Part shown: positions 16,686 through 58,847 of the stretch, one piece after another | Layout: the number at the start of each line of letters is the position of its first letter | How positions within the stretch are numbered: position 1 is the first letter of the stretch | Assembly (NCBI RefSeq): GCF_006345805.1 | Contig: NC_043023.1 | Coordinates: 10,416,001 to 10,480,000, forward strand | Source: Octopus sinensis | Taxonomy: Eukaryota | Reading direction: 5' to 3' | Length of the DNA: 64,000 nucleotides | Made by a program: the position numbers and the translations under genes | Notes under the pieces: generated by a model | Seen by the model: only the letters and a program-made list of their open reading frames with translations | Told to the model about the DNA's origin: nothing | The model's database searches: none

Positions 16686-16719
<34 letters not shown>

Positions 16720-16995: not shown

Positions 16996-16999
16996 TTCT

Positions 17000-17521
17000 C
17001 TTTCCCTTTTGTTTACGTTTTGCATTATTCCTCTTTTTCCCTTTGCCCTACTCTCACCCTCTCTATATTTCCCTCTCTTTTCTATATTCCTTTCTCTCCT
17101 CCCTCTCTCTTCTTTGTAGCTGCCTCTCTTTCTCTGTTCCCTTCATAACTCTATCACTCCTGCCCCTTTCTCTCTCACAATTTCTCTTCTTCTCTCCCAA
17201 CATACCTCTCTGTCATTTATTACATTCGTTCTCCTTTATTACGCTTTCTCTTCCCTCTCCTCTCTCTCTCTCTGTCTTGTGCGTCTCTATCCCCCCTCTT
17301 CCTTTACCAAATGTATAACTCTCTTCATCTCCCTCTCTCTATGTCTATCTATTTCTCTTCGTTATCACTCTCTCTCTCTCATTCCCTCTTTCTCTCTCTC
17401 TGTCTTTATCATTAGGTCCCTCCCTTCTTCCTTTTGTTTCCCCTCTCTCTTCCTTTTACTCTTTTCATCTCTGCGCCTTTCATATTTCTCTTTGCCGTCC
17501 CTATCACTCCGACCCTTTTTC

Positions 17522-17552
<31 letters not shown>

Positions 17553-17840
17553 GTCTTGTGCGTCTCTATCCCCCCTCTTCCTTTACCAAATGTATAATTC
17601 TCTTCATATCTCTCTCTCTATGTCTATCTATTTCTCTTCGTTATCACTCTCTCTCTCTCATTCTCTCTGTCTTTATCATTAGGTCCCTCCATTCTTCCTT
17701 TCGTTTCCCCTCTCTCTTCCTTTCACTCTTTTCATCTCTGCACCTTTTATATTTCTCTTTTCCCTCCTTATCACTCCAACCCTTTCTTCTCTCCTCCCTC
17801 TTCCCTTCTATATCTCTCCCTCTCTCCCTCCCTTTACATC
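17000..17840. repeat. CT-rich low-complexity region with an about 278-bp tandem duplication
   Basis: ctgtcttgtgcgtctctatcccccctcttcctttaccaaatg at about 17273 and 17551. Confidence 0.8.
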
Positions 17841-20128: not shown

Positions 20129-22746
20129 AAAGAAGACCAGCTCGGAGGAGAAGAGTCTGGAAACTTAAAGATCCTGAAAATGGACGGAGATTTAGAGAAG
20201 TTCTACTCGAAGCTTTCGACGAAATAGAAAGGGATATAGCATCACATAATGTGGAAGCCAACTGGAGGTTTCTACGGGACAATCTGCTGAGAGCCACTGA
20301 CCAGATCTGTGGGTGGAGCAAAGTCCCATCTCATCCCAGGGTAACATGGTGGTGGAACAATGTTGTAGACAGGGCTATTAGAGACAAGAGACAGGCTTGG
20401 AAGGACTGGAGGAAACGCGGTAGTAGGGAATTGTATCAGACTGCGAAAAGAGAAGCTAGGAGACAGGTATATTTAGCTAGAGGGGAAGCAGATTAGAAAA
20501 AATTTGCCAATGTTCTGCACCGCGAGGACCAAAGACTTGAGGTGTTTCGTGTTGCAAGACAGTGTGTGAGAGAGAATCGTGATGTGGTAGGAGAGAAATG
20601 TGTCCGCATGGATGATGGTTCACTTGCGCTAAATGAGGATGCAAAGAGAGAGGTTTGGAGATGCCACTATGAAAGGTTGCTCAACAAAGAGAATGAATGG
20701 GATAATGAGAGTCTGCCGAATGTTGACCCAATAGAGGGACCAGCTATCCGAGTTGACAGTTCCATGGTAATTAAGGCAATTGGAAGCATGAAGACAGGGA
20801 AAGCCCCAGGCCCATCAGGAATTACTGCTGAGATGCTCAAAATATCTGGCAGTGTCGGCTATAGCCTAGTCACCCGTATAGTTAACCAGGTGATACACGA
20901 AGAAGTCATACCCAATGACTGGTGTAGCAGCATAATAGTTAACTGCTACAAAGGTAAAGGTGACGCCCTAGATACAAATAACTACAGGGGTATCAAGCTG
21001 CTGGATCAGGTAATGAAGGTTACGGAGAGCGTTATAGCCCAACTAATTAGAGAGAGAATTAGCTTAGATGAGATGCAGTTTGGGTTCGTGCCAGGGAGAA
21101 GTACTACTGATGCTATATTCCTGGTAAGACAGCTGCAGGAGAAATACCTAGCCAAAGATAAGCCCCTGTACCTGGCTTTTGTCGATATGGAGAAAGCCTT
21201 CGACAGGGTCCCCCGATCCCTTATCTGGTGGTCAATGAGGAAACTAGGGATAGATGAATGGTTAGTGAGTGCTGTGCGTGCTACGTACAGGGACGCTGTT
21301 AGTAAGGTGAGGGTTGGCAACGAGTACAGTGAAGAATTCCGGGTGGAGGTTGGGGTCCACCAAGGCTCAGTCCTCACCCCCCTCCTATTTATCATAGTCC
21401 TCCAGGCAATAACGGAGGAATTCAAGACAGGATGCCCCTGGGCGCTCCTCTATGCTGACGACCTTGCTCTAATTGCTGAATCACTATCAGAACTCGAGGT
21501 GAAGTTTCAGGCGTGGAAGCAAGGATTATAATCGAAGGGCCTTAGAGTCAATCTAGCTAAAACCAAAGTCCTAATAAGTAGGAAGGTAGACAAATCTCAA
21601 ACACCTTTAGGTAGATGGCCCTGCTCGATCTGTAGAAAAGGCGTAGGTAGGAACTCTATAAGATGCACCAAGTGTAAGCTATGGACACATAAGAGGTGCA
21701 ACAATGTCAAAGGAAGGCTAACTAGGAAGATAGTTTTTGTATGTGGCAGATGCTCTGGTTCAATAAAGACTGAAGAAGTGCAGAGACCATCTTCCGCCAC
21801 ATTCCAGGGAGAAAAACTTGAAATTGTTGATAGTTTCCGTTACATAGGTGACCAAGGGTGGGTGTGCTGAAAGTGTAACTGCTAGAGTAAGAATAGCCTG
21901 GGCAAAGTTCAGAGAGCACTTACCTCTGCTGGTGACAAAAGGCCTCTCGCACAGAGTAAAAGGCAGACTGTATGACGCATGTGTGCGAACAGCCATGCTA
22001 CATGGCAGTGGAACATGGGCCGTGACTGCTGAGGATATGCGTAAGCTCGCAAGAAATAAAGCCAGTATGCTCCGTTGGATGTGTAATGTCAGTGTTCATA
22101 CCCGACAGAGTGTAAGTGCCTTGAGAGTAAAGTTGAACCTAAGAAGCATCAGATGTGGTGTGCAAGAGAGGCATCTACGCTGGTATGGACACATAGTAAG
22201 AATGGATGAAGATAGTTGTGTGAAAAAGTGCCACACCCTAGCGGTTGAGGGAACCTGTGGAAGAGGTAGACCCAGGAAAACCTGGGACGAGGTGGTGAAG
22301 AACGACCTTCGCGCTTTAGGTCTCACTGAGGAAATGACCAGAGACCGAGACCTTTGGAAGTATGCTGTGCGCGAGAAGACCCGGCAGGACACATGAGGCC
22401 ATAACCCATGGCCCCTACCTGGGACGTAGTCAGTCCACCTGTGCATACCTTCCTTCTTGGGACACATAACTCTACTTGTGAAGACCTGTTGAGGCAAGTG
22501 AAAATCAAATCAAATCAAAATCGATGAACATCAATAGAATTTGTATTTTTGTGGTACCAGTGCTGGTGGCACATAAGAAAACAATCCGAACGTGGCCGTA
22601 GCCAGTACCGCATTGACTGGCCTCCATGCTGTGGGCACGTAACAAACACCATCCGATCGTCGCTGTATTTACCCGGTGCATATCGCCACACACTCCCGGA
22701 GACTGACGGCATCGATCGCGCCTATGTTAAACGATGATGATGATGA
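20128..22746 (+). mobile_element. 5'-truncated RTE-clade LINE, disabled ORF2 (RT)
   Basis: QFGFVPGRSTTDA, FVDMEKAFD, GVHQGSVL, YADD motifs; stops at 20494 and 21529, frameshifting deletion near 21855; 3' UTR and (GAT)n tail. Confidence 0.95.
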
Positions 22747-24518: not shown

Positions 24519-26440
<1,922 letters not shown>

Positions 26441-28981: not shown

Positions 28982-30100
28982 ATGGGCAAAACAGCATTTG
29001 ATTGTGATATCTGTGGCAAGTCGTTCTCTCGGAAAGCTAAGTTAGTCATTCACGAACGTACTCATACAGGAGAAAAACCATATCACTGTGAAATCTGTGG
29101 TAAATCTTTCTCTCGAAACGAAAACTTAACTAGGCACAAGAGTGGTGTTCACACTGGAGAAGCACCATATCACTGTGAAATCTGTGACAAATCGTTTTCT
29201 CAAAACGATCACTTAACTATGCACAGGCGTGTTCATACAGGAGAAAAACCATATCACTGTGAAATCTGTGGTAAATCTTTCTCTCGAAACGATACCTTAA
29301 CCAAGCACAAGCGTGTTCATACAGGAGACAAGCCATATCACTGTGATATCTGTGGTAAAATATTATCTCAGAAAGGTAGCTTAGTCACTCACCGACGTAT
29401 TCATACAGGAGAGAAGCCATATCACTGTGATGTTTGTGGTAAATCATTTTTTGATATTCATCATTTAACTACTCACAAACGCATTCATACAGGTGAGAAG
29501 CCATATCGCTGTGATATCTGTGATATATCATTCTCTCAAAGGTATAACCTAACTAGGCACAAATACATTCATACAGGAGAAAAACCATATCACTGTGATA
29601 TCTGTGGTAAATCCTTTTCTCTAAACGATCACTTAACCAAGCACAAGCGTGTTCATACAGGAGAAAAACCATATCACTGTGAAATCTGTGGTAAATCTTT
29701 TTCTCAAAACGATACCTTAACTATGCACAGGCGTGTTCATACAGGAGAAAAACCATATCACTGTGAAATCTGTGGTAAATCTTTCTCTCAAAACGGTACC
29801 TTAACCAAGCACAAGCATTTTCATACAGGAGAAGGATCATATCACTGTGAAATCTGTGGTAAATCCTTTTCTCAAAACGATCACTTAACTATGCACAGGC
29901 GTGTTCATACAGGAGAAAAACCATATCACTGTGAAATCTGTGGTAAGTCTTTCTCTCGAAACGATACCTTAACCAAGCACAAGCATGTTCATACAGGAGA
30001 AAAACCATTTCACTGTGAAATCTGTGGTAAGTCTTTCTCTCGAAACGATACCTTAACCAAGCACAAGCATGTTCATACAGACAGAGAACACATTTCATGA
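28982..30100 (+). CDS. C2H2 zinc-finger protein, 13 fingers; leader interrupted by TAG
   Basis: 372-aa ORF ending HTDREHIS*; the paralogous start ATG (28898) is followed in frame by TAG at 28970. Confidence 0.8.
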
Positions 30101-30733
30101 GGAATAGATTCATTTCCCAAGGTACAGACTTCGTTTATGAGTTTTATTTTTCAAGCACAACATCCAAATTTTGAAAGACTCTACTACCATAACAAATGCA
30201 TCTGTGTCTTACCAAGAAGTTTATAAAGAGCAAAGGAATGCTTCTCAGTAAAGAACTCTAGACTTGTTTCTTGTGAATCAGTGGTCACGTCTACAAATAA
30301 TGGTGTCCCTGAGTCTTTTCAAAGCGATTCAGAAAACAATTATAATAATAATATTTTATCTATTCTAAATGATCTTGACATTGTTTTTGACTTTACATAA
30401 AATATTCTTTACATTCTACTGTTGTTTTATTGTCATTTATTTACAAGTATTATAAATTTTAGAGGTAAAATATTTTTCTGGAAATGAATTACAATTTATA
30501 ACATTGCTTCTATGGGAAATTATTGCTTTGCTTTATGAGTTTTCACTTTAGGAGCAATCTCCAGGAAGAAATTAACTCGTATATCAAGGCATTATTGTGT
30601 TTGACATTATTTTGGCACAAAGCCAACAATTTCAGGGGAAGGAATAAGTTGAATAACCACATGGATTAGCATGTGTGCTTTTTACATGAACTAGCACAAA
30701 TGCTTCTTTTAGGGAGTGGCATTGCATGATATA

Positions 30734-31132
30734 TCTATATATATAAAGCTGAAGTTGTCTGTGTGTGTGGCAGGTTTTGTAGCCTTCAACTAACACTATC
30801 TCTACCGAGATACTGTGGCGTATGTTGACCAAAATTGAGAGTATGATAAAAGACACCTTGCCCTTCCTTCCGTAGAAGAAAAAATTCAAATCGCACCATG
30901 TCAACACCAAAAATTATTTAGATCAGAATGGTGCTTTTTTTTCTATGAGAATCCCTAATTTTTACGATTCTTTGACTGCTGTGTCGCCGTTTTTCGGTGT
31001 ATTTCAACCAGAAAACTGTTCACTTTTAGAGAATAACAAGCTACATAATGCAAGATTTTTACTTTTCGAAAATTCCAATTCTAAAGGGTCGAAAAGAAAA
31101 TAAACCCGAGCAACGCTGGGCGATACTTCTAG
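30734..31132 (+). mobile_element. Non-autonomous Helitron (about 400 bp)
   Basis: A|TC start, 3' GC hairpin cccgagc-aac-gctggg, CTAG|T end, no TSD. Copies at 48800-49194, about 54976-55370 and 63891-64000 (partial). Confidence 0.75.
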
Positions 31133-31679
31133 TATATATATGAAGCTGTGTAACTTCTCATATATATTTGAAGGTGCATGGCTCAATCGTGAGTTCAATT
31201 TCCATTCATCTTCATCACATTGAACAATGTTAAAGGGTCAAAGTGAAATGCAGCCACATTTTCTCCACAAAACTACTTTAAAACGTTTTCCAATGGCTGA
31301 ATGACGAAACGTATTAATCTGGTTTCTGCCCTAAATATTCTGCTAAAGTAAGGATGCATCTTGTACACCAGCAAATACTCAGTGAAGTGCAAGTTAATTC
31401 ATAATTAGTCAACGCCGTTGCCAAACACTGAAGAATCTTGTTTAATAATTTGGCTAATTTAGTGAAATTCAAAAGTTACTCCAATACTGATTCGGTGTAA
31501 GGAATGGAAACCTACTTATTTCCCCTTTAATTTCTATTTACTTTCTTAAATCTCCCATACTGAAGGATTATGCTTATTAGAGCCATGCTATCCATGTCAA
31601 CCATGTACAATTACTAACATTTTCTCACACTAAACCATCCCTCTTACTAAAAATATCCTTCTTCTAGAGGATGGGGCTT

Positions 31680-32080
31680 AGTCAACGGGTACTTATTTTA
31701 TCGACACCTAAACGATGAAAGACCCAATCGACCATGGTGGAATTTGAACTGAGAACTGTGGGATGACGTCAGCGGTTAGGAAGCTGACCGGAAGAGGAAG
31801 AGTGCGTAAAGGGTTGGGGTGATTGCGCCCTTTTCGATCGGGGAAGTTGTGAGTGCAGGACGTGTCAGTGCTTCGACCAGATAAGGGATAGCATCTGCTA
31901 TTTTTAGCGTTTCGGGACGGGCCACGTGGAAGGGTACATTACTATCGGACAGATAAGGGTCAACGAAGAGAAGGTGAGTGTCTTACTTCTAATCTCCCGC
32001 ATTTACTACGAACGTAGCGACGGTCGAAATAGCGGTTAGTATTTCGTCCGGCGTGCTAACCATCCTGCCAGCTCGCCGCC
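31680..32080 (-). mobile_element. Antisense tRNA-type SINE (OR-like family) split by a 253-bp insert
   Basis: Flanks reverse-complement the intact SINE at 40326-40552; same arrangement at about 49740-50142 and 57167-57567. Confidence 0.8.
31757..32009 (+). promoter_or_regulatory. 253-bp CpG-rich insert: candidate promoter and exon 1 (copies 49819-50071, 57244-57496)
   Basis: TGACGTCA 31764, CCGGAAG 31788, CACGTG 31923, donor AAG|GTGAGT 31973/31974 (GTACGT in the other two copies); flanked by GAAC duplication. Confidence 0.65.
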
Positions 32081-32114
32081 CTGCAAAATACGTTAGATGC
32101 TTTGGGCAGATAGG

Positions 32115-32210
32115 TTGTCCAAGCGGTCACCCATCTAAGTACCCTGCAGGCTCGACATTGCTTCACTTCGGTGATCAGGCGAGACAAGGTGCAATCAGCA
32201 TTATATGGCT
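32115..32210 (-). pseudogene. 5S rRNA-derived sequence (copies 39775-39869, 50177-50272, 57602-57697)
   Basis: 39.8 kb copy reads gccatatcaagtagaatgcaccggttttcgtgcgatcatcgaagttaagcaatgtcgagcctaccaagtacttagatgggtgacc, matching about the first 95 nt of animal 5S; 3' end missing. Confidence 0.8.
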
Positions 32211-33989
32211 GTAATAACAATATTAACAGTTTCAAAACATTCGCATTTTCTGAAGGTGGTAAAGTAGAGTTTGGTCAGTCGGTCGTACAAGTTATTCTCC
32301 TTGATATAATTGTTTCTTCAGTTATCTGCTAGAAGCAAAGTTTTTATTAAAAGGCCTACTGATGGTGGTTTAGGGGACTTAGTAACTACCATCGACCTCT
32401 TGTTTTGACTGGGTCTTTATTTTATTCATCCCAAAGCAATGAAAGGTAAAATTGACATCGGTGGGATTTCGTTTCGGTAATTAAAGCAAACCAATGTATG
32501 TTTTATACATTCCCCTTTTTTATAAGTTTTTGTCAGTGATATTTCTGGTGTCAGATATTCTTTGATCTCGTCTGAAATTAATGATTTTTCTGGATGAATT
32601 TCTAGTTTTGTATCAAAACTGAAGGGGAAAGGACTATTTCGAAGATAACGAGTGAGATTAAATTGTGAGTGAAGTAATAATTTCTTCTTATTTTATATTA
32701 AATTTCGTTTTCTCTTTGTACAAACCTGTTTTGGTGGGAAATCTTAACAATATTCAAGATTTCTTTACATTTTCCCGATCATAAATGCTATTTGTAAACC
32801 TGCTGAAATTATGAAAATTAAGTTATTTATAGAAAAATATGTTTTTATGAAATTTGCTATAAATACCATTCAGAATGTGTATATTAGAATTCTATCGGAA
32901 TTTAATATGAAAATATAAATTTGGTGGGCTCGTACACGTGAAAGTTAAAATTTTTAACGAAATTCTGGACTTGTCTCAGTATGTATGTGTATTTGTGTGT
33001 CTTTGTGTTAGTGTTTCTTCCCCTCCCATTCCCGCTTAACGAACGGTGTTGGTATATTTACATCCCTGGAACTTTCGGCAGTAGACTGATAGAATGAATT
33101 CCTGGCATAAAAAAACAAGTACTTGGGTCGATCCAATCTCACTACAGATTCTTCAAGGAGATTCCCCAGCGTGGTGGCAGTCTAATGACAGAAACAACTA
33201 AAAGATAATAATAATAATAATAATTAATTCGTTTATTGGCCACAAGGGCTAACAAAAATCAATTATAACAAGCTATTTACCACACAACCACTCCTGTGCC
33301 TATAAAAAGATGTAGTAAAACTTTCACTGCTTTAATCTCTCTAATTCCTTATTATCTTGTATGTTTTACACCGTTGTTTCTCTTTCGTTTCAAATTTTCA
33401 GATGACATCTGCTACACAGAATTTTTACATATGCAACGTCATTAGAATGGAAAGTATTTTGAAGACTGAGCAAAGATGTTACACAAAACACGTATAACCC
33501 TGTTTCTATAAATATTTACTGAATTACTGCAAAATATATCTTCTGAACTCTGACATATATGTAGCAAAATTTCTCTTTATTGTCTGGAATACACAGAAAA
33601 TTATATTTGCATATTAATTAATCGTTTAGCATTAAACCTGGCCGTATCAGTCCCAAACGTTCAAGCTATTTTACGTTAAAACTGCCCACATCTGGCCTCT
33701 TCCACTCACCCTGCAATGTCATTCTAAACATAAACAATCACATCATTGAAATCTTAAAGCAATAAGATAATGAATGATTAATTCAGAAGAATTTGAATAA
33801 ATAATCATTAGATTTGACAGTGTAATCTGCGTGTTAATGAGTTAAAGTAATTAAGAAGGCAGTTTGCAGCATCTTCAGATATTAACAAAGATCACTTTTG
33901 ATGGAGATATATCAGTAGAAATATTTGATGTGAGCAATATATGAGAAGAAGGAAAACCTTTGTGTACTGTGACGAGAGAAAGGAAAATC

Positions 33990-35249
33990 ATGGAAAAGGA
34001 ATTTTGTGAAAGAACTGATTTTTCTGATGATGTAAACAATGAAAAGGGCAAAATATCATATGATTGTGATATTTGTGGTAAATTCTTCTCTAGGAAAGCT
34101 AGCTTACTCATTCACAAACGCATTCATACAGGAGAGAAGCCATATCATTGTGATATCTGTGGTAAGTCCTTCTCCCAGACTGGTTCTATAATTATTCACA
34201 AGCATAATGTTCACACAGGAGAAAAACCATATTGCTGCGAAATCTGTGGTAAATCATTCTCACAAGGTAATGACCTGACTAAGCACAGATGCGTTCATAC
34301 AGGTGAGAAGCCATGTCACTGTGATACCTGTGGTAGATCGTTCTTTCGAAATCATGTCTTGGCTAGGCACAGACGCATTCATACAGGAGAGAAGCCATAT
34401 CATTGTGATATCTGTGGTAAGTCCTTCGCTCAGACTAGTTCCGTGACTATCCACAAGCGTAACGTTCACACAGGAGAAAGACCATATCGCTGTGAAATCT
34501 GTGGTACATCATTCTCTCGAAATAATGGCTTGACTAGGCACAGACTTATTCATACAGGAGAGAAGCCATATCACTGTGATATTTGTGGTAAAACATTCAC
34601 TCAAAATAATGGTTTGACTAGGCACAGACGCATTCATACAGGAGAGAAGCCATATCACTGTGATATCTGTGGAAAATCATTCTCTGAAACTAGTCCCTTA
34701 AGTATTCACAAGTGTGTTGTTCACACAGGAGAAGAACTATATAACTGTGAATTCTGTGGTAAATCATTCTCTCAAAATAATGACTTGGTTAATCACAAAC
34801 GCATTCATACAGGAGTGAAACCATATCACTGTTATATTTGTGGTAAATCATTCTGTGAAGATATAAACTTAACTAATCACATACGTATTCACACAGGAGA
34901 GAAGCCATATCAGTGCTATATCTGTGGTAAATCATTCTCTCACGGACCCAATTTAGCTGTTCACAAACATGTTCATTCAAGTGTGAAGCCATATCACTGT
35001 GAAATCTGTGGTAAATCCTTCTCTCGAAACGATTACTTAACTTGCCATAAGCGTGTTCATACAGGAGAAAAGCCATATCACTGTGAAATCTGTGGTAAAT
35101 CATTCTCTCAAAATGAACAGTTACCTAAGCATATGCGTGTTCATACAGGAGAAAAGCCATATCACTGTGAAATCTGTGGTAAATCTTTCTCTCGAATTTA
35201 TAACTTAACTCGTCACAAACGTACTCACACAGGTGAAATGGCATATTGA
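33990..35249 (+). CDS. C2H2 zinc-finger protein, 14 diverse fingers
   Basis: First ATG in frame at 33990 ([14 protein letters not shown]...); 14 fingers; ends HTGEMAY*. Confidence 0.9.
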
Positions 35250-38644: not shown

Positions 38645-39530
38645 AATGATGTCAAACTGGTCGCTCCTCGCGGTGATATAGATGATCTTCGTCAATGCCT
38701 CCACCAAGTTTGGAGATGGTCTAACAAATGGGACCTGTGTCTGAACGTGTCAAAGTGCTGTCATCTGCCTGTTGGCTCTTCTCCTGCAACTCAACTTGAT
38801 TTCGAGCCGGGTCGTCTGCTGCTGGAGAGGACCGACCAGGTAAAGGACCTGGGTATCTTGGTGGATTCTTCCTTTTCACCTTCAGCCCAGTGCGTCCATG
38901 CTGCCAACAATGCACGTGGAGTTCTCTTTTTGATTTGACGGTTATTCGGAATGCTCAAAGCAGCCATATTCCTACCGCTCTATGTCACGCTGGTGAGACC
39001 CATATTAGAGTGCGGGATTCAAGCCTGTTCTTCTTATCTCCTCAAAGAAATACATCATTTCAAAAGAGTCCAGAAGCTGGCTACCCGCATGGTTCTTGGT
39101 GTCAAGCATTTGTTTTATGAAGAAAGGCTGAAGACGCTCAACCTTTATTCTCTAGAAAAACGCTGCTGCCATGGTGATCTCATTCTCGCTCACATCATAA
39201 GTGGAAAGTGTAACCTCTTGAAAGAGCTGTTCTTCACTCCTGCTCCAGAGCGTCGGCTGTGGGGTCACTCCGAAAAGCTCTATCTATGACGATTTCATCT
39301 CAATCGAAAGAGAGGGGCTTTCTCCGACCGGGTTGTGGATCCGTGGAATAAGCTGCCGGAAGAGATAGTGAAGATGCCCACGACCACTCTGTTCAAAGTC
39401 TCTCTTGACGAGAAATGGCCTGAACTCTTTGCATGAACACCCTCCCTGTACATAACTCCATGTCCCCCTACATGGCCTTGCTTTTTGCTTTTTGAGCCAA
39501 AAAATTAACTTAACCTAACTTAACTTAACT
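38645..39530 (+). mobile_element. 5'-truncated CR1-clade LINE (RT C-terminus, 3' UTR, (TTAAC)n tail)
   Basis: DVKL...LNVSKC...KDLGILVDS...LYVTLVRPILE...RVQKLATRMV...YEERLKTLNLYSLEKR; internal stops. Confidence 0.9.
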
Positions 39531-39869
39531 ATCTCTCTTACTAAAAATCTCTTCTAAAGGCACAACGCCTGAAATGTGGGGAGTTGGCTAGTCGATTACA
39601 TCGAGTCCAGTGTTTAACTGGTAACCATTTTATCAACCCCGAAAATATAAAAAGCAAAGTCGATCTTGACAGAATTTGAACTCAGAACGTCGCGAAACAT
39701 TTTGTCCAGTGCGCTAACGATTCTGCCAGTTCACTGCCTTAGAAATGTGAGTGAGATGCTTTCATCATGTACGCTTCCCAAGTGGTCACCCATCTAAGTA
39801 CTTGGTAGGCTCGACATTGCTTAACTTCGATGATCGCACGAAAACCGGTGCATTCTACTTGATATGGCT

Positions 39870-40268
39870 TTAATGGCCGTTGCCAGCGCCGCCCCGACTG
39901 GCCTCCATGCCGGTGGCACGTAAGAAGCACCATCCAATCGTGGCCGTTTGCCAGCCTCGCCTGGCACGTAAAAAGCACCATCCGATTGTGGCCGTTGCCA
40001 GCCTCGTCTGGCCTCCGTGCCGGTGGCACATAAAAAGCTCCATCTGATCATGGCCGTTTGCCCGCCTCGTCTGGCACCTGTGCCGGTGGCACGTAAAAGC
40101 ACCCACTACACTCACAGAGTGGTTGGCGTTAGAAAGGGCATCCAGCTGTAGAAACACTGTCAGATCAGACGGGAGCCTGGCGCAGCCTTCTGGCTTCACA
40201 ACCCCAATTGAATCGTCTAACCCATGCTAGCATGGAAAACGGACGTTAAACGATGAGGATGATGATGA
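39870..40268 (+). mobile_element. SINE-like / RTE 3'-UTR element
   Basis: gtgccggtggcac modules and cggacgttaaacgatga tail; absent at the paralogous position near 32210. Confidence 0.8.
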
Positions 40269-40325
40269 ATCATAACAGTTTTAAAACATTTTTCGTATTT
40301 TCTAAAGGTGGTATATTAGTTCGTG

Positions 40326-40552
40326 TCGAGCTGGCAGAAACGTTAGCACGACGGGCGAAATGCTTAGCGGTATTTCGTCTGCCGTTATGTTGTGAGTTCA
40401 AATTCCGCCGAGGTCGACTTTACCTTTCATCCTTTCGGGGTCGATAAATTAAGTACCAGTTACGCACTGGGGTCGATGTAATCGACTTAATACCTATGTC
40501 TGTCCTTGTTTGTCCCTTCTACGTTTAGCCCCCTGTGTGTTATAAAGAAATG
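40326..40552 (+). mobile_element. Intact OR-like tRNA SINE with 16-bp TSD
   Basis: TSD ggtatattagttcgtg at 40310-40325 and 40553-40568; B-box gagttcaaattcc. Confidence 0.9.
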
Positions 40553-41290
40553 GGTATATTAGTTCGTGGCAGTTATTCACCTTGATATAATTGTTTATTT
40601 AGTTATCCGCTAGGAGCAAAATCGATCGACCTAATATTGGGGTTGTAGGGTGATTAGTGTCTGTCATCGATTTCTGTTTTTGATAGATCTTTATTTTATT
40701 GATTCTGAAGCATCTGAAGCAATGACAGGTAAAATTTGACATCGGCAGGATTTGACCTCAGAACATAAAAGAAACATAAGAAACACTGCATTACCTAATT
40801 TCGTTTCGGGATTTAATGAAAACCATTACGTATTTTATATATTCCCCGTTTACACAATTTTTGTCATGGTTCTTTTTAGGGTCAGATATTCTTTGACCTC
40901 GTCCGAAATTAATGATTTTTCTCGATGAATTTCTACTTTCGTATCAAAACTGCTGGGGGGAAAGACTATCGGAGGATAAGGAGTGATATTAAATGGTGAG
41001 TAAAGTAATAATTTCATTTTGTTTTTATATTAAATTTCGTTTTCTCTTTGTACAAACCTGTTTTGGTGGGAAATCTTAACAATATTCAAGATTTCTTTAC
41101 ATTTTCCCGATCATAAATGCTATTTGTAAACCTGCTGAAATTATGAAAATTAAGTTATTTACAGAAAAATGTATATGTATTAATGAGATTTGCTACAAAT
41201 ACCATCCAGAATGTTTATATTACAATTCTATCGGAATTTAATGTGAAAATATAAATTTGTTGGGTTCGTCCTCATTCATTACTGACATAT

Positions 41291-41712
41291 AGTTAAGTTA
41301 AGTTAATTTTTTGGCTCAAAAAGCAAAAAGCAAGGCCATGTAGGGGGACATGGAGTTATGTACAGGGAGGGTGTTCCTGCAAAGAGTTCAGGCCATTTGT
41401 GGTCAAGAGAGACTTTGAACCGAGCGGTCGTCGGCATCTTCACTATCCACGGATCCGCAACCCGGACGGAGAAAGCCCCTCCCCTTCGATTGAGATGAAA
41501 TCGTCGCAGGTAGAGCTTTTCGGAGTGACCCCACAGCCTACGCTCTGGAGCAGGAGTGAAGAACAGCTCTTTCGAGAGGTTACACTTTCCGCTTATGATG
41601 TTGTGAGCAAGAATGAGATCACCACGGTGTCGTCGTTTTTCTAGAGAATAAAGGTCGAGTGTCTTCAGCCTTTCTTCATAAGACAAATGCTTGAGACCAA
41701 GAACCACATGTA
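41291..41712 (-). mobile_element. CR1-clade 3' fragment, antisense
   Basis: KHLSYEERLKTLDLYSLEKRRHRGDLI... with (TTAAC)n tail. Confidence 0.9.
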
Positions 41713-42251
41713 TCGACAAAATAAAAGTTGGAATTTTTTAAAGCGAATTCTTAGTCTGTGTCAGAATGTATATTCGTGTGTGCAGTTTGGTCTCAGTGTT
41801 TCCACCTCTTCTATTCCCACTTAACAAATGGAGATGGTTAATTTACATTCCCGTAACTTAGCATTTTGGCAATAAACGGAGATTGAATGAGTTTCAGACA
41901 GAAAGGGGAAAATGAATAGATGACGGCGAATGTAAAGAAGACGGATCGCACCGCCTTTCGGTTATTATTTTCCTTTTTTGTTTGGGTATTTTCTACCCAC
42001 ATTTTCGACTGCGGAGATACCGAATCTGCGAAAAAAAAAATGGGCATTTCAGAATTTTAATTCCCCCGCCCCCCACCTCTTTTTCACTTTTTTTGGATTT
42101 TTTTTTTTTTTTTTTTGCGAAATACGTTGTAAAACACAGAAATTGTGATTCTGAAAAAAAAATTTGTAAAATTTCAATTTTACAAAAAAAAAGAAAAAAA
42201 ATTAAGAACCCTTCCCTCCTACTAAAATAGTAAACGTATCTAAAGAGAAAA

Positions 42252-43010
42252 CTCGACATGCTAGAAACAGCAGCTAAACAACGAGTCACTAATTCAAATT
42301 TTTATTCCACCTTCTCGACATGCTAGAAATAGAAGCTAAACAACGAATCACTAATTCAAATCTTTATTCCCCCACCACCCCCTTCTCGACATGCTAGAAA
42401 CAGCAGCTAAACAACGAATCACTAATTCAAATTTTTATTCCCCCACCACCCCCTTCTCGACATGCTAGAAACAGCAGCTAAACAACGAATCACTAATTCA
42501 AATTTTTATTCCCCCCACCACCCCCTTCTCGACATGCTAGAAACAGCAGCTAAACAACGAATCACTAATTCAAATTTTGATTCCCCCCACCACCCCTTCT
42601 CGACATGCTACAAAACAGCAGCTAAACAACGAATCACTAATTCAAATCTTTATTCCCCCCACCCCCCTTCTCGACATGCTAGAAACAGCAGCTAAACAAC
42701 GAATCACTAATTCAAATTTTTATTCCCCCCACCCCCCCTTATCGACATGCTAGAAACAGCAGCTAAACAACGAATCACTAATTCAAATTTTTATTCCCCC
42801 CACCCCCCTTCTCGACATGCTAGAAACAGCAGCTAAACAACGAATCACTAATTCAAATCTTTATTCCCCCCACCCCCTCTTCTCGACATGCTAGAAACAG
42901 CAGCTAAACAACGAATCACTAATTCAAATTTTTATTCCCCCCACCCTCTTCTCGACATGCTAGAAATAGCAGCTAAACAACGAATCACTAATTCAGATTC
43001 CACCCCACTC
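42252..43010 (+). repeat. About 71-bp minisatellite, 11 units
   Basis: ctcgacatgctagaaacagcagctaaacaacgaatcactaattcaaatttttattc(c)n at 42252, 42314, 42385, 42456, 42528, 42599, 42670, 42741, 42811, 42882, 42951. Confidence 0.95.
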
Positions 43011-43219: not shown

Positions 43220-43570
43220 TTATTGAAATCTTAAAGCAATAAGACAATGAATGATTAATTCAGAAGAAATTTCAATAAATAATCATTACATTTGACAGAG
43301 TAATCTCAATGTTAATGAGTTAAAGCAATTAAGAAGGCAGTTTGCAGCATCTTCAGATATTAACAAAGAACACTTTTGATGGAGATATATCAGTAGAACT
43401 ATTTGTTCAGAGCAATATACGAGAAGAAGGAAAACATTTGTGTACTGTGACGAGAGAAAGGGAAATTATGGAAAATGAATTATATAGGAGTGAAGATCAA
43501 TACAAAAAACAATCTGAAAAAATTGATTTTTCTAATGAGGAAAAGAATGAAAAGGGCAAAACAGCATTTT
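43220..43570 (+). pseudogene. Leader-only ZNF fragment, cut just before finger 1
   Basis: [34 protein letters not shown] followed by unrelated sequence. Confidence 0.85.
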
Positions 43571-44111
43571 TTCCCTAACCTTTTAGGCTCGTGGCTGCTA
43601 GTGCCATGTGGAAATCTCCAATATAAACTCTGTAAGGTGGTCGTGTTACGAAGGGCATCCAACCACAAAAACCAAGCTAAAATAGAGATGGAGCCTGAAC
43701 AGCCCTTCAGTTGGTTACCTCCTTTCAAACCATCCAACCCATGCCAGTGTGTAAAATGGAATTTAAATGATGATGAAGTAATAATTTTAAATTTGTATAG
43801 ACATCTTGTAGTATGCTGTTCAAAGCCTGCTCACTGTATTTGGCTATCTGATGTCATACCCTTGCATACAAGCTTGTCTCTAGCAACCTTCTCCAGCTGA
43901 GCATCCCTAATCTTCCAGGCTCATAGGGGCTGCATAAGAGCATCCAGCACACCCTGTAAAGTGGTTGCATTATGAAGGGCATCCAGCCATAGAAACTATA
44001 CCAAAACAGAAATGAACCCTGAACAGCCCTCAGCTGGTTAGCACCTTTCTAACCATCCAAGCCATGCCAGTATGTAAAATGGACTTGAAATGATGATGAA
44101 GTAATAATTCT

Positions 44112-44493: not shown

Positions 44494-45616
44494 GTATAAA
44501 CCTTTTGTGCTATTTAAAGCCTGCTCACTGTATTTGGCTATCTGATGTCATCAACAGTCAGGATTTAAATGACACTGGACTTACTTGAGGCATTCTTTCA
44601 TCTCAGTCGAGACAAGAATATGAGAAGAAGAGAAGAGAAATAGAATTTACAAACTACTATTTAGTATGATTGCTTCAACACATCATTCATTAGTGACTTG
44701 TCAAAAGGTACCTCATATTTAAAGTTTCTGTTTTGCTTAATCCAATTAGAATTCATTTTCGTATTTGGTTTATGTCAAGCTTCTTTGAGTTTCCATCTAC
44801 CAAATCCTCTCCCAAGGCTTTGATTGGCCACTCTGGGACTGAACCCAGGACCATGTGGTTGGGAAGCCAACTTCTTACCACACAACCATCCCTGCACTTC
44901 TACAGCCATGTCTATATAAAAATGTAGTAAAACTTTCACTGTTTTAATCTCTCTAATTCCTAATTATCTTGTATGTTTTACACTGTTGTTTCTCTTTCGT
45001 TTCAGATTATCAGATGACATCTGCTTCACAGGATTTTTACATAAGCAACGTCATTAGAATGGAAAGTCTTTTGAAGACTGAGCAAAGATGTTATACAAAA
45101 CACGTATAACCCTGTTTCTATAAATATTTACTGAATTACTGCAAAATATATCTGCTGAACTGAAAGAAGTAATCACATCACTGAAATCTCAAATCTATGA
45201 GATAATCCATGATTCATTGAAAACAATTTGAATAAATAAGCATTACATTTGAGAAAGGAATCTGAATGCTTAAGGGTATTTCAATAAAATATTTACAAGT
45301 TCTTTATTCAAACCTGCCAGATCCTACCACTCACACCCACCCTACAATGTCATTCTAAACGTAAAGAATCATATCGTTGAAATCTTAAATCTGTAAGATA
45401 ATGAATGATTAATTAGGAGGAATTTGAATAATCATTACATTTGACAGAGTAATCTGAATGTTAATGAGTTAAAGCAATTAAGAAGGCAGTTTGCAGCATC
45501 TTCAGATATTAACAAAGATCACTATTGATGGAGATATATCAGTAGAAATATTTGTTAAGAGCAACATACGAGAAGAAGGAAAACCTTTGTGTACTGTGAC
45601 GAGAGAAAGGAAAATT

Positions 45617-48161: not shown

Positions 48162-51100
48162 GGAATAGATTCACTTCCCAAGTTACAGACATTGTTTATG
48201 AGTTTTACTTTTCAAGCACAACATCCAAATTTTGAAAGTTTCTACTACCATAACAAATGCATCTGTGTCTTACCAAGAAGTTTATAAAGAGCAAAGGAAT
48301 GCTTCTCAGTAAACAACTCTAGACTTGTTTCTTTGCTTGTGAATCAGTGGTCACGTCTACAAATGATGGTGTCCCTGAGTCTTGTGAAAGTGATTCAGAA
48401 AACAATTATAATAATAATATTTTGTGTATTCTAAATGATCTTGACATTGTTTTTGACTTTACATAAAATATTCTTTACATTCTACTGTTGTTTTATTGTC
48501 ATTTATTTACAAGTATTATAAATTTTATTGGTAAAATATTTTTCTGGGAATGAATTACAATTTATAATATTGCTTCTATGGGAAATTATTGCTTTGCTTT
48601 ATGAGTTTTCACTTTAGGAGCAATCTCCAGGGAGAAATTAACTCATATATCAAGGCATTATTGTGTTTGATATTATTTTGGCACAAGGGCAGCAATTTCA
48701 GGGGAAGGAGTAAGTTGAATAACCACATGGATCAGCATGTGTGCTTTTTACATGAACTAGCACAAATGCTTCTTACAGGGAGTGGCATTGCACGATATAT
48801 CTATATATAGAATGCTGAATTTATCCGTGTGTGTGGCAGGGTTGCAGCCTTCAACTAACACTTTCTCTACCGAGACGCTGTGGTGAAAGTTGACCAAAAT
48901 TGAGAGGATTATAGATGAAGGCTTGCTCTTCCTTCCATAGAAAAAATTCAAATCGCACCATGTCAACACCAAAAATTATTTAGATCAGAAAGGTGTTTTT
49001 TTTTCTATGAAAATCCCTATTTTTTACGATTCTTTGACTGCTGTGTCACCGTTTTTCGGTGTATTTCAACCAGAAAACTGTTCACTTAAAGAGAATAACA
49101 AGCTACATAATGCAAGATTTTTACTTTTCAAAAATTCCAATTCTAAATGGTCGAAAAGAAAACAAACCCGAGCAACGCTGGGCGATACTTCTAGTATATA
49201 TATGAAGCTGTGTAATTTCTCATATATATTTGAAGGTGCATGGCTCAATCGTGAGTTCAATTTCCATTCGTCTTCATTACATTGAACAATGTTAAAGGGT
49301 CAAAGTGAAATGCAGCCACATTTTCTCCACAAAACTACTTTAAAACGTTTTCCAATGGCTGAATGACGAAACGTATTAATCTGGTTTCTGCCCTAAATAT
49401 TCTGGTAAAGTAAGGATGCGTCTTGTACACCAGCAAATACTCAGTGAAGTGCAAGTTAATTCATAATTAGTCAACGCCGTTGCCAAATACTGAAGAATCT
49501 TGTTTAATAATTTGGCTAATTTAGTGAAATTCAAAAGTTACTCCAATACTGATTCGGTGTAAGGAATGGAAACCTACTTATTTCCCCTTTAATTTCTATT
49601 TACTTTCTTAAATCTCCCATACTGAAGGATTATGCTTATTAGAGCCATGCTATCCATGTCAACCGTGTACAATTACTAACATTTTCTCACACTAAACCAT
49701 CCCTCTTACTAAAAATATCCTTCTTCTAGAGGATGGGGTTTAGTCAACTGGTACTTATTTTATCGACCCCGAAACGATGTAAGGCACAATCGACCGTGGT
49801 GGAATTTGAACTGGGAACTGTGGGATGACGTCAGCGGCTAGGAAGCTGACCGGAAGAGGAAGGGTGCGTACAGGGTTGGGGCGATGGCGCCCTTTTCGAT
49901 CGGGGAAGTTGTGAGTGCAGGACGTGTCAGTGCTTCGACCAGATGAGGGATAGCAGCTGCTATTTTTAGCGTTTCGGGACGGGCCACGTGGAAGGGTACA
50001 TTACCATCCGACAGATATGGGTCAACGAAGAGAAGGTACGTGTCTTACTTCTAATCTCCCGCATTCACTACGAACGTAGCGACGGTCGAAATAGCGGTTA
50101 GCATTTCGTCCGGCCTGCTAACGATCCTGCCAGCTCGCCGCCCTGCAAAATACGTTAGATGCTTTGGGCACATAGGTTGTCCAAGCGGTCACCCATCTAA
50201 GTACCCTGCAGGCTGGACATTGCTTCACTTCGGTGATCAGGCGAGACAAGGTGCAATCAGCATTATATGGCTGTAATAACAATATTAACAGTTTCAAAAC
50301 ATTCGCATTTTCTGAAGGTGGTAAAGTAGAGTTTGGTCAGTCGCTCGTAGAAGTTATTCTCCTTATAATTATTTATTCAGTTATCTGCTAGGAGCAAAGT
50401 TTTTATTAAAAGGCCTACTGATGGTGGTTTGTGGGACTTAGTATCTACCATCGACCTCTTGTTTTGAATGGGTCTTTATTTTATTCATCCCAAAGCAATG
50501 AAAGGTAAAATTGACATCGGTGGGATTTCGTTTCGGTAATTAAAGCAAACCAATGTATGTTTTATACATTCCCTTTTTTATAAGTTTTTGTCAGTGATAT
50601 TTCTGGTGTCAGATATTCTTTGATCTCGTCTGAAATTAATGATTTTTCTTGATGAATTTCTACTTTTGTATCAAAACTGAAGGGGAAAGGACTATTTCGA
50701 AGATAACGAATGAGATTAAATTGTGAGTGAAGTAATAATTTCTTCTTATTTTATATTAAATTTCGTTTTCTCTTTGTACAAACCTGTTTTAGTGGGAAAT
50801 CTTAACAATATTCAAGATTTCTTTACACTTTCCCGATCATAAATGCTATTTGTAAACCTGCTGAAATTATGAACATTAAGTTATTTATAGAAAAATATGT
50901 TTTTATGAAATTTGCTACAAATACCATTCAGAATGTGTATATTAGAATTCTATCGGAATTTAATATGAAAATATAAATTTGGTGGGCTCGTACACATGAA
51001 AGTTAAAATTTTAAAAGAAATTCTGGATTTGTCTCAGTATGTATGTGTATTTGTGTGTCTTTGTGTTAGTGTTTCTTCCCCTCCCATTCCCGCTTAACGA

Positions 51101-56601: not shown

Positions 56602-58847
56602 ATATATATATATATATATGAAGTTATTATGTAACTTCTCATATATATTTGAAGGCGCATGGCTCAATCGTGAGTTCAATTCCTGTCATCTTCATCACAT
56701 TGAACAATGTTAAAGGTTAAAGGGTCAAAGCGAAATGCAGCCACATTTTCTCCACAAAACTACTTTAAAACGTTTTCCAATGGCTGAATGACGAAACGTA
56801 TTAATCTGGTTTCTGCCCTAAATATTCTGGTAAAGTAAGGATGCATCTTGTACACCAGCAAATACTCAGTGAAGTGCAAGTTAATTCATAATTAGCCAAC
56901 GCCGTTGCCAAACACTGAAGAATCTTGTTTAATAATTTGGCTAATTTAGTGAAATTCAAAAGTTACTCCAATACTGATTCGGTGTAAGGAATGGAAACCT
57001 ACTTATTTCCCCTTTAATTTCTATTTACTTTCTTAAATCTCCCATACTGAAGGATTATGCTTATTAGAGCCATGCTATCCATGCCAACCGTGTACAATTA
57101 CTAACATTTTCTCACACTAAACCATCCCTCTTACTAAAAATATCCTTCTTCTAGAGGATGGGGTTTAGTCAACTGGTACTTATTTTATCGACCCCGAAAC
57201 GATGAAAGACCCAATCGACCATGGTGGAATTTGAACTGAGAACTGTGGGATGACGTCAGCGGCTAGGAAGCTGACCGGAAGAGGAAGGGTGCGTACAGGG
57301 TTGGGGCGATTGCGCCCTTTTCGATCGGGGAAGTTGTGAGTGCATGACGTGTCAGTGCTTCGACTAGGTGAGGGATAGCATCTGCTATTTTTAGCGTTTC
57401 GGGACGGGCCACGTGGAAGGGTACATTACCATCTGACAGATATGGGTCAACGAAGAGAAGGTACGTGTCTTACTTCTAATCTCCCGCATTCACTACGATC
57501 GTAGCGACGGTCGAAATAGCGGTTAGCATTTCGTCCGGCCTGCTAACGATCCTGCCAGCTCGCCGCCCTGCAAAATACGTTATATGCTTTGGGCAGATAG
57601 GTTGTCCAAGCGGTCACCCATCTAAGTACCCTGCAGGCTGGACATTGCTTCACTTCGGTGATCAGGCGAGACAAGGTGCAATCAGCATTATATGGCTGTA
57701 ATAACAATATTAACAGTTTCAAAACATTCGCATTTTCTGAAGGTGGTAAAGTAGAGTTTGGTCAGTCGCTCGTAGAAGTTATTCTCCTTCATATAATTAT
57801 TTCTTCAGTTATCTGCTAGAAGCAAAGTTTTTATTAAAAGGCCTACTGATGGTGGTTTGGGGGAGTTAGTAACTACCACCGACCTCTTGTTTTGAATAGG
57901 TCTTTATTTTATTCATCCCAAAGCAATGAAAGGTAATATTGACGTCGGTGGGATTTCGTTTCGGTAATTAAAGCAAACCAATGTATGTTTTATACATTCC
58001 CCTTTTTTATAAGTTTTTGTCAGTGATATTTCTTGTGTCAGATATTCTTTGATCTCGTCTGAAATTAATGATTTTTCTGGATGAATTTCTACTTTTGTAT
58101 CAAAACTGAAGGGGAAAGGACTATTTCGAAGATAACGAGTGAGATTAAATTGTGAGTGAAGTAATAATTTCTTCTTATTTTATATTAAAATTCGTTTTCT
58201 CTTTGTACAAACCTGTTTTAGTGGGAAATCTTAACAATATTCAAGATTTCTTTACATTTTCCCGATCATAAATGCTATTTGTAAACCTGCTGAATTTATG
58301 AAGATTAAATTATTTATAGAAAAATACGTTTTTATGAAATTTGCTATAAATACCATTCAGAATGTGTATATTAGAATTCTATCGGAATTTAATATGAAAA
58401 TATAAATTTGGTGGGCTCGTACACATGAAAGTTAAAATTTTAAAAGAAATTCTGGATTTGTCTCAGTATGTATGTGTATTTGTGTGTCTTTGTGTTAGTG
58501 TTTCTTCCCCTCCCATTCCCGCTTAACAAACGGTGTTGGTATATTTACATCCCTGGAACTTTCGGCAGCAGACTGATAAAATGAGTGCCAGGCATAAAAA
58601 ACAAATACATATATATATATATATCATGGTGATCTATGTAAAGGGCATCTATACTGCTCTGCATAAAAAACACCCATACAAGGACCATGTGAGAAGATCT
58701 CAATACAATCTCTAAAGTGGTGGGCATTAAGAAGAGTGTCCAGCTGTAGAAAGCAATCTAAATCAGGCAGGAACTGGGGGCAGCACTCCTGTTTGCCAGC
58801 ACAGGTCAAACCAACCAACCTAGGGAAGCATGGTAAATGGACATTAA

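What the first reader, a model, noticed from the sequence alone, without database searches (positions are those of the whole stretch)
31757..32009. Promoter-like 253-bp cassette nested in a SINE and amplified with three ZNF genes; empty site visible
An antisense tRNA SINE is split at GAAC beside its B-box by a CpG-rich insert with CRE (TGACGTCA), ETS (CCGGAAG), E-box (CACGTG) and a donor, flanked by GAAC repeats. Length and motifs are the same at 49819 and 57244. The paralogous SINE at about 39600-39740, with the same 5S and unique downstream flank, has a single GAAC (39685-39688) and no insert. It begins TGTGGGA and has TCCCGCA near its end, so it may be a solo LTR, although a terminal CA is not clean. 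Inference: a TE-in-TE insertion was exapted as promoter and exon 1 and then spread by tandem duplication.
Basis: partly seen in the sequence, partly recalled or inferred. Interest (0 to 1): 0.8.

Follow-up and report, generated by a model that had tools for sequence, protein, structure and literature searches.

The report
Promoter-like insert upstream of octopus ZNF genes
A 253-base, CpG-rich piece of DNA with promoter-type motifs landed inside an old SINE upstream of an octopus zinc-finger gene and was then copied twice along with the gene. The structure is real, but its origin and its promoter role remain unproven, and this kind of event is ordinary.

Summary
Three gap-free 253-bp copies (31757, 49819, 57244) interrupt an antisense tRNA-derived SINE that carries a 5S pseudogene head. 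Each is flanked by a 4-bp duplication, GAAC. A fourth, older paralogous unit has the same SINE and 5S joined to the same right flank, with one GAAC (39685-39688) and no insert. An independent SINE copy (40326-40552) is also uninterrupted at that site. So the insertion followed the U2 split and preceded the tandem triplication (copies 94.5-97.6% identical).

The insert has no TG...CA termini and no terminal inverted repeats. No second copy was found in the window, in about 72 kb of other Octopus DNA, or in any searchable collection, so "solo LTR/TE" is unsupported. No eukaryotic genome could be searched.

The promoter and exon-1 role is plausible. The motif cluster is rare: the full CRE occurs only in the cassettes within 64 kb. 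A consensus splice donor lies in gene orientation, and CpG o/e is about 1.0 against 0.65 for the window. However, the cassette shows no sequence constraint, no transcript data could be reached, and two of the five paralogs lack it.

This is a tidy dated insertion and a candidate captured promoter. Interest is modest.

The parts
31757..32009 (+). 253-bp CpG-rich cassette, copy U1. CRE 31764-71, ETS 31788-94, TATA-like TATTTTTAG 31899-907, E-box 31923-28, donor AAG|GTGAGT after 31973.
49819..50071 (+). Cassette copy U3, with donor AAG|GTACGT after 50035.
57244..57496 (+). Cassette copy U4, with donor AAG|GTACGT after 57460.
31753..31756 (.). Left copy of the 4-bp target-site duplication GAAC. 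The right copy is at 32010-32013. The same pair sits at 49815-18/50072-75 and 57240-43/57497-500; the last right copy reads GATC.
31658..31756 (-). 3' part of the host tRNA-derived SINE (B-box side), separated from its 5' part by the cassette. The 3' boundary is approximate.
32010..32097 (-). 5' part of the host SINE (A-box side) plus the linker to the 5S head.
32098..32216 (-). Degenerate 5S rRNA pseudogene directly 5' of the SINE.
   Evidence: 25.4 bits, full model length
39530..39745 (-). Paralogous SINE copy (U2a), uninterrupted. The single GAAC at 39685-39688 is the empty site.
39758..39875 (-). 5S pseudogene of the paralogous unit U2.
   Evidence: 60.3 bits
40326..40552 (+). Independent copy of the same SINE family (SINE b). 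It has no 5S head and has a perfect 16-bp TSD (40310-25 and 40553-68). It is uninterrupted at the cassette site. U1, U3 and U4 are its empty sites.
33402..33491 (+). Exon-2-like segment of U1: poly-Y...CAG|ATG...CAC|GTATAA. Homologs are at 28315 (U0), 45014 (U2), 51460 (U3) and 61283 (U4). This is the proposed splice target of the cassette donor.
33990..35249 (+). C2H2 zinc-finger ORF of U1 (419 aa from MEKEF...). The downstream genes of the other two cassettes are at 52084-54317 and 61907-63295.

Best explanation
Setting. The window is a tandem cluster of Octopus C2H2 zinc-finger genes. Five same-strand units are present, here called U0 to U4.

Shown:
- In the ancestor of units U1, U3 and U4, a 253-bp CpG-rich DNA segment was inserted into an old antisense tRNA-derived SINE. 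That SINE has a 5S pseudogene at its 5' end and lies about 1.4 kb upstream of the gene's 5' exons.
- The insertion duplicated 4 bp of target (GAAC), right next to the SINE's B-box.
- The older paralog U2 keeps the pre-insertion state.
- A roughly 2-5 kb tandem duplication unit containing the cassette and the gene was then copied twice.

Inferred function. The segment works as an RNA polymerase II core promoter plus a short non-coding first exon:
- CRE and ETS sites sit at its 5' end.
- A TATA-like element and an E-box lie 30-75 bp before a consensus splice donor.
- The donor points toward a conserved acceptor-bearing exon 1.4-3.8 kb downstream, followed by the zinc-finger exon.

Inferred origin. 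The segment is more likely a one-off captured piece of DNA, such as another gene's promoter and first exon-intron junction pasted in during break repair or template switching with 4-bp microhomology, than a member of a mobile-element family. This could not be tested against a whole genome.
For: Structure:
- There are three gap-free copies.
- GAAC flanks each copy.
- The SINE is continuous across the site in U2a and in the independent SINE b.
- U1 and U2 are collinear on both sides. The junction between the 5S 5' end and the right flank is identical once U2's private insertions are removed (81.6% identity).
- U1-U2 flank identity is 77-88%, against 96-97% among U1, U3 and U4. This brackets the time of insertion.

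Promoter reading:
- GC is 51-55% and CpG o/e is 1.02-1.07, against 0.65 for the window.
- The full CRE palindrome occurs only in the cassettes within 64 kb.
- All three motifs together occurred in 0 of 20000 shuffles. A perfect donor occurred in only 2% of shuffles.
- The cassette has the same orientation as the genes.
- An acceptor-bearing exon-2-like segment is present in all units.
- The cassette has no coding potential or RNA-family match, as expected for a 5' UTR.

One-off origin:
- No terminal structure was found.
- No second copy was found in about 136 kb of Octopus DNA or in any collection.
Against: - No transcript, TSS or chromatin data could be reached, so promoter and donor use rest on motifs picked after the fact.
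- The cassette is no better conserved than neutral flanks: 16 substitutions in 253 bp, against 3.2-4.2 per 100 bp outside it. Power is low at about 4% divergence.
- U2 lacks the cassette and has the longest open frame. U0 also lacks it. The gene family therefore does not need it.
- If translation started in the exon-2-like segment, U1 and U3 would have stop codons before the fingers.
- The searchable collections contain almost no cephalopod DNA, so the absence of other copies is weak evidence against a TE.
Confidence: 0.5

Rival explanations
1. The insert is a solo LTR, or another short transposable element, that brought its own promoter and was exapted as promoter and exon 1.
For: - It starts with TG.
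- A 4-bp TSD fits LTR integrases.
- TGTGGGA at the start and TCCCGCA near the end form an imperfect inverted pair.
- LTRs carry enhancer and promoter motifs.
- Insertion beside a Pol III B-box recalls tRNA-gene-targeting retroelements (general knowledge, not tested here).
Against: - The 3' end is ...TTTACTAC, not CA. Eight bases lie beyond TCCCGCA with no explanation.
- There are no TIRs.
- No AATAAA is present in the sequence read.
- No other copy or LTR-internal neighbour was found in the window or in four other Octopus loci.
- A consensus splice donor with intron-like sequence after it is unusual inside an LTR.
Confidence: 0.15
2. The insert is an inert passenger. It is real and was duplicated with the genes, but it does not drive them. 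The ZNF genes are transcribed from elsewhere (or some are decaying pseudogenes), and the motifs are merely inherited from the source sequence.
For: - The cassette shows no excess conservation. Ten of its 16 substitutions are private to U1.
- U0 and U2 lack it.
- A more distant O. sinensis paralog (L002) keeps the exon-2-like segment and intron-1 homology but has no cassette, 5S or SINE upstream.
- An O. sinensis gene model starts at the inner ATG (MENEL...), with no information on 5' exons.
Against: - The motif cluster, donor, orientation and position upstream of an acceptor all fit a promoter.
- All three copies keep every motif and a usable donor even though the donor sequence itself differs (GTGAGT against GTACGT).
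Confidence: 0.3
3. The cassette was already present before U1 and U2 separated and was later lost precisely from U2, for example by deletion between the two GAAC repeats.
For: Deletion between short direct repeats does occur. With one event, the data cannot formally polarise it using the paralogs alone.
Against: - The SINE entered the genome intact. Both the independent SINE b and U2a show the uninterrupted sequence, so the uninterrupted state is ancestral.
- Exact restoration of that state requires an extra, precise event.
Confidence: 0.03
4. The 39.7-kb SINE is an unrelated, independent insertion of the same SINE family, so there is no true empty site.
For: - The U1 and U2a SINE bodies are only 71-74% identical, lower than the flanking 77-88%.
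- Each carries private indels.
- The family is active nearby, as SINE b shows.
- The left flank is obscured by a LINE 3' end in U2.
Against: - Both have the same unusual composite (5S head, about 25-nt linker, SINE) in the same orientation.
- Both share the same junction with the right flank, followed by a long collinear chain.
- A weak collinear match also exists on the left: 31269-317 with 38464-512, E = 3e-8.
- Even if this rival were true, the SINE consensus would still show the insertion and the TSD.
Confidence: 0.05

Closest known systems
TE-derived or LTR-derived alternative promoters and first exons of host genes (exaptation), including those of mammalian KRAB-ZNF genes
   Same: Inserted DNA upstream of a gene supplies transcription-factor motifs and a donor that could splice to the gene's existing second exon. 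The insertion is lineage-specific and datable from an empty site.
   Different: The insert could not be assigned to any TE class. No family copies were found and no expression evidence is available. The host is a cephalopod C2H2 ZNF without a KRAB domain.
Zebrafish chromosome-4 ZNF (FiNZ) genes with a shared promoter architecture multiplied by tandem duplication (Hadzhiev et al., as summarised in PMC10547256)
   Same: A promoter module is amplified together with young ZNF paralogs, giving an array of near-identical promoters.
   Different: There are only three copies here. The architecture is CpG-rich with CRE, ETS and E-box motifs, not the clear TATA-box type described there. No expression data exist here.
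Filler DNA or templated insertions captured at double-strand breaks, or by microhomology-mediated template switching
   Same: It appears to be a single-copy insert without terminal structure, flanked by a very short (4-bp) repeat.
   Different: No donor locus was identified, so this remains an inference by exclusion.
Nested TE insertions used with paralogous empty sites to order events in segmental duplications
   Same: This is the same logic: a filled and an empty paralog, a TSD, and divergence classes of 77-88% and 96-97%.
   Different: Nothing unusual. The second SINE (SINE b) gives a reciprocal empty site in the same pair of paralogs.

Membership tests
Solo LTR (LTR retrotransposon) | Termini 5'-TG...CA-3' with short terminal inverted repeats | tested here: not met
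   It starts TGTGGGA and ends ...TCCCGCATTTACTAC. No terminal inverted repeat was found at seed 6.
Solo LTR (LTR retrotransposon) | 4-6 bp target-site duplication | tested here: met
   GAAC lies on both sides of all three copies, with one right copy mutated. A single GAAC is present in intact SINEs.
Solo LTR (LTR retrotransposon) | Dispersed copies, some flanking an internal gag/pol region | tested here: inconclusive
   None was found in the 64-kb window (nhmmer) or in 72 kb of four other Octopus loci. No whole cephalopod genome was searchable.
MITE / cut-and-paste DNA transposon | Terminal inverted repeats plus a superfamily-specific TSD | tested here: not met
   There are no TIRs. GAAC is not TTAA, TA or TWA.
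Non-LTR retroposed fragment (LINE 3' end, SINE, processed RNA) | A 3' poly-A or microsatellite tail, and a TSD of variable, usually longer length | tested here: not met
   Neither end has a tail on either strand. The local SINE b shows what this genome's LINE machinery produces: a 16-bp TSD. No Rfam family matched.
CpG-island-type RNA polymerase II promoter with first exon | GC of at least 50%, CpG o/e above 0.6, length over 200 bp | tested here: met
   The cassette has GC 0.51-0.55 and o/e 1.02-1.07. The 550-bp block 31651-32200 has o/e 1.06, against 0.65 for the window.
CpG-island-type RNA polymerase II promoter with first exon | Cluster of promoter-type transcription-factor motifs beyond chance | tested here: met
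   CRE, ETS and E-box together: 0 of 20000 shuffles carried all three. The CRE is unique to the cassettes within 64 kb. The motifs were chosen post hoc.
CpG-island-type RNA polymerase II promoter with first exon | Mapped transcription start and use of the splice donor | not testable with these tools
   Exact-product look-ups found no contig for any window ORF. The O. sinensis models give CDS ranges only.
CpG-island-type RNA polymerase II promoter with first exon | Purifying selection relative to flanks | tested here: not met
   The cassette has 6.3 substitutions per 100 bp, against 3.2-4.2 in unique flanks. Power is low.
tRNA-derived SINE (host element) | tRNA-like head with A and B boxes, family copies with their own TSDs | tested here: met
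   TRGC..A-box-like and GTTCAAATTCC B-box-like segments align among U1, U2a and SINE b. SINE b has a perfect 16-bp TSD. ARAGORN calls no tRNA gene, as expected for a SINE.
5S rRNA (pseudo)gene next to the SINE | Match to Rfam RF00001 over the full model | tested here: met
   U2: 60.3 bits, above the gathering score. U1: 25.4 bits, below the gathering score, over model positions 1-120.

The most novel reading that the evidence does not exclude
A promoter and first exon-intron junction copied from an unrelated gene was pasted by a DNA-level event, not by transposition, into a SINE upstream of a ZNF gene. It gave that gene a new, broadly active (CRE/ETS/E-box) transcription start, and the rewired gene then expanded by tandem duplication. 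On this reading, promoter capture would be the trigger for a young ZNF sub-cluster in Octopus, with an unrewired sister paralog (U2) preserved next door as a natural control.
Probability: 0.2. Interest if true: 0.55.

Novelty: new member of a known kind. Interest (0 to 1): 0.3.

Why it matters
If the cassette is an active promoter, the locus is a clean natural experiment. Four neighbouring, recently related ZNF genes differ mainly by the presence (U1, U3, U4) or absence (U2) of one 253-bp insert whose arrival can be dated between two duplication waves. That would let one ask how a new promoter changes the expression and fate of young cephalopod ZNF paralogs, a family whose expansion is often linked to transposon activity (PMC12988792, PMC10547256). 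If the cassette is inert, it is just a well-documented nested insertion.

Tried and rejected
- MAFFT of the four units misplaced the large gap. It was replaced by pairwise alignment of joined flanks.
- Species and transcript look-ups by exact ORF product failed. This covered the ZNF ORFs and a 32-aa cassette ORF.
- A whole-ZNF protein search was swamped by generic vertebrate ZNFs. An N-terminal query gave two O. sinensis models.
- Translating the cassette and searching protein databases, to find hidden copies on public contigs, gave nothing.
- A second such search gave only a spurious hit to a repeat protein.
- Pfam matched none of the five longest stop-free translations of the cassette.
- Exact-pattern scans of metagenome contigs (two) and viral contigs (one) gave no hits.
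- O. sinensis locus L002 has a CpG-rich stretch upstream of its exon-2-like segment, but it is only a LINE 3' end.
- CpG-decay analysis, meant to infer germline methylation state, showed no CpG hypermutability anywhere and is uninformative.
- Considered and rejected: NUMT (GC far too high for octopus mtDNA, from general knowledge), small-RNA pseudogene, and internal tandem duplication (only a 15-nt repeat).

Full report
**What the window is**

The sequence is AT-rich (36.5% GC, CpG o/e 0.65). It is filled with tandem C2H2 zinc-finger arrays of 84-bp period and retroelement fragments.

An N-terminal query found only Octopus sinensis proteins. An O. sinensis contig (L001) matches 29233-31657 at 90.7%, and at 97% over the last 547 bp. 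Orthologous O. sinensis and O. vulgaris loci are 92-95% identical. The window is therefore from Octopus, either one of these two species or a close relative.

Five same-strand gene units can be recognised. I call them U0 to U4, with ZNF arrays ending near 30.1, 35.2, 48.1, 54.3 and 63.3 kb. Each unit has a highly similar exon-2-like segment (poly-Y...CAG|ATG...CAC|GTATAA) and an exon-3 start.

**Checking the observation**

The 38-nt start of the cassette occurs exactly three times, with at most one mismatch and none expected by chance. The three 253-bp copies align without a gap.

They sit inside a larger duplication:
- 28988-33633 matches 47049-51694 at 91.5%.
- 31133-33122 matches 56611-58608 at 96.2%.
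- 49195-51175 matches 56611-58604 at 96.7%.

The flanks are the two halves of an antisense tRNA-like SINE, followed by a 5S pseudogene. GAAC lies directly on both sides of the insert. One right-hand copy, in U4, now reads GATC.

**Is 39.7 kb a real empty site?**

A sensitive U1-against-U2 comparison gives a collinear chain:

| U1 | U2 |
|---|---|
| 31269-317 | 38464-512 |
| SINE tail and body | SINE tail and body |
| 5S | 5S |
| 32219-267 | 40268-319 |
| 32283-933 | 40564-41269 |
| 33297-769 | 44909-45400 |

U2 has private insertions:
- a LINE 3' end to the left of the SINE;
- a GC-rich repeat block at 39876-40267, with copies elsewhere in the window;
- a second SINE of the same family (SINE b, 40326-40552) with a perfect 16-bp TSD. 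For this one, U1, U3 and U4 are the empty sites.

When the last two insertions are removed in a script, U2's right flank aligns to U1's at 81.6%, starting at the first base after the 5S 5' end. The 5S-SINE composite therefore sits at the same junction in both units, so it is the same insertion inherited by both paralogs.

The SINE bodies are more diverged (71-74%) than the flanks (77-88%), and each has private deletions. I attribute this to decay and not to independent origin, and give the independent-insertion alternative 5%.

Independently of paralogy, both U2a and SINE b read straight through the site, as ...ACGTTCTGAGTTCAAATTC and ...ATGTTGTGAGTTCAAATTC in SINE sense. The 253 bp are therefore an insertion relative to the element as it entered the genome, and GAAC (GTTC in SINE sense) was duplicated.

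**Order of events**

1. The SINE and 5S were in place.
2. U2 split from the ancestor of U1, U3 and U4 (12-23% divergence).
3. The cassette was inserted.
4. Two tandem duplications followed (3-5% divergence).

U0's homology to the other units begins only at 26978, downstream of a 1.9-kb (TA)n array. Its equivalent region is missing and uninformative.

**What is the insert?**

- It has no terminal inverted repeats.
- It starts TG but ends ...CTAC.
- It has no poly-A or microsatellite tail.
- It matches no Rfam family.
- It has no Pfam match in the five longest stop-free translations.
- nhmmer with a profile of the three copies finds nothing else in the window.
- BLAST finds nothing in four other Octopus loci totalling 72 kb.
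- Protein-level searches with the two longest translated frames, meant to catch ORFs called on public contigs that carry a copy, found nothing real.
- Exact-pattern scans of metagenome and viral contigs were empty.

None of these collections holds a cephalopod genome, so the TE question stays open. Still, every testable hallmark of an LTR, a MITE or a retroposed fragment fails except the 4-bp TSD.

A short flanking repeat with no terminal structure also fits a fragment captured during break repair or template switching. In that case one GAAC would belong to the donor. I lean towards this, partly because the piece looks like a promoter followed by an exon-intron boundary and 36 bp of intron-like sequence.

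**Does it act as a promoter and first exon?**

For:
- GC is 51-55% and CpG o/e about 1.0-1.07, the strongest such block in the window.
- The full CRE palindrome occurs nowhere else in 64 kb.
- CRE, ETS and E-box together never arise in 20000 dinucleotide shuffles, and a perfect donor arises in 2% of them.
- A TATA-like TATTTTTAG sits about 70 bp before the donor in all copies.
- The orientation matches the genes.
- An acceptor-bearing exon lies 1.4 kb (U1, U3) or 3.8 kb (U4) downstream.

Against or neutral:
- The motifs were chosen after looking.
- The three copies carry 16 substitutions in the cassette (6.3 per 100 bp), against 3.2-4.2 per 100 bp in unique flanks. There is thus no sign of constraint.
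- The escape of the 21 motif positions from substitution has p of about 0.25.
- CpG sites do not mutate faster anywhere here, so methylation state cannot be inferred.
- U2, without the cassette, has the longest intact frame (716 aa if exon 2 is joined to exon 3).
- U0, U1 and U3 have stops between the exon-2 ATG and the fingers. All units keep an inner ATG (MENELY/MEKEF), which is also where an O. sinensis gene model starts. Exons 1 and 2 would then be 5' UTR.
- No transcript evidence could be reached.

I put promoter activity at roughly even odds.

**Comparison with what is known**

Insert-derived promoters and first exons are a well-known way for genes, ZNF genes included, to gain new regulation. 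Promoter modules multiplied with ZNF genes by tandem duplication are described for zebrafish chromosome 4 (PMC10547256). In octopus, the link between SINE bursts and ZNF expansion is discussed only at the genome scale (PMC12988792).

This locus would be one concrete, datable example. It is not a new kind of mechanism.

**Verdict**

- The insertion, the TSD, the empty paralogous site and the tandem spread are shown.
- The solo-LTR or TE identity is not supported.
- The promoter and exon-1 role is plausible but untested.
- Overall confidence in the combined explanation is about 0.5. The structural part is above 0.9. The functional part is about 0.5. Origin by capture is about 0.35-0.4.

Noticed in passing
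window 32010-32216 and 39530-39875 (minus strand); compare 40326-40552: The host element is a composite: a full-length 5S rRNA pseudogene, a linker of about 25 nt, then the tRNA-derived SINE. The independent SINE b, with its own TSD, has no 5S head. The composite may therefore be a chimeric retrocopy (template switch from SINE RNA to 5S rRNA) and not a 5S-headed SINE family.
   Followed up: partly
window 40310-40568: SINE b is a clean young insertion with a perfect 16-bp TSD (GGTATATTAGTTCGTG). U1, U3 and U4 preserve its empty site. U1 and U2 are thus reciprocal filled and empty sites for two different insertions within 1 kb.
   Followed up: yes
L001 3485/3486 (O. sinensis VCDQ01007568.1), matching window 31657/31658: The O. 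sinensis contig follows the U0-U1 intergenic region at 97% identity. It then diverges abruptly at about the 3' boundary of the host SINE into 507 bp that match nothing in the window. This could be a different rearrangement, another insertion, or a chimeric contig end.
   Followed up: partly
window 31873-31887 and 31945-31959: Two U1-private substitutions (31883 G>A, 31956 T>A) each create AGATAAGGG, a GATA-type motif, 72 bp apart. U1 carries 10 of the 16 cassette substitutions.
   Followed up: no
window 28838, 33942, 52177 (stops); 45497-47555 and 61907-63002 (open): If the exon-2-like ATG were the start codon, U0, U1 and U3 would terminate 20-31 codons into exon 3. Only U2 and U4 read through. 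A conserved inner ATG (MENELY/MEKEF) precedes the fingers in every unit. In U2, U3 and U4 the finger arrays continue past the ORF stop, which suggests frameshifts or sequencing indels.
   Followed up: partly
window 43344-43576: There is an extra, truncated copy of the exon-3 start (76 codons open, no fingers) inside U2's long upstream region. It is a remnant of another unit.
   Followed up: no
window 39876-40267; also 757-1060 (-), 7135-7448, 22560-22666, 56305-56601: A GC-rich repeat with internal repeats of about 60-90 bp (GTGGCCGTTGCCAGC...CACGTAAAAAGCACCATCC) ends in (GAT)n. One copy is inserted exactly between the 5S 5' end and its flank in U2. Another abuts the start of the U4 duplication unit.
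   Followed up: partly
window 24543-26437, 10415-10841, 16086-16996, 42310-42999, 17247-17801: Large simple repeats are present: 1.9 kb of (TA)n directly upstream of U0 where the cassette-bearing segment would be expected, further (AT)n and (GTAT)n arrays, a 71-bp satellite of about 10 units, and a strongly strand-skewed CT-rich 267-bp repeat.
   Followed up: no
window 38650-39520 (+), 41291-41719 (-), 12205-12444; L002 8711-9145: Copies of a LINE 3' end carry a reverse-transcriptase C-terminal ORF and end next to (TTAAC)n. The family is shared with O. sinensis at 87-91%.
   Followed up: no
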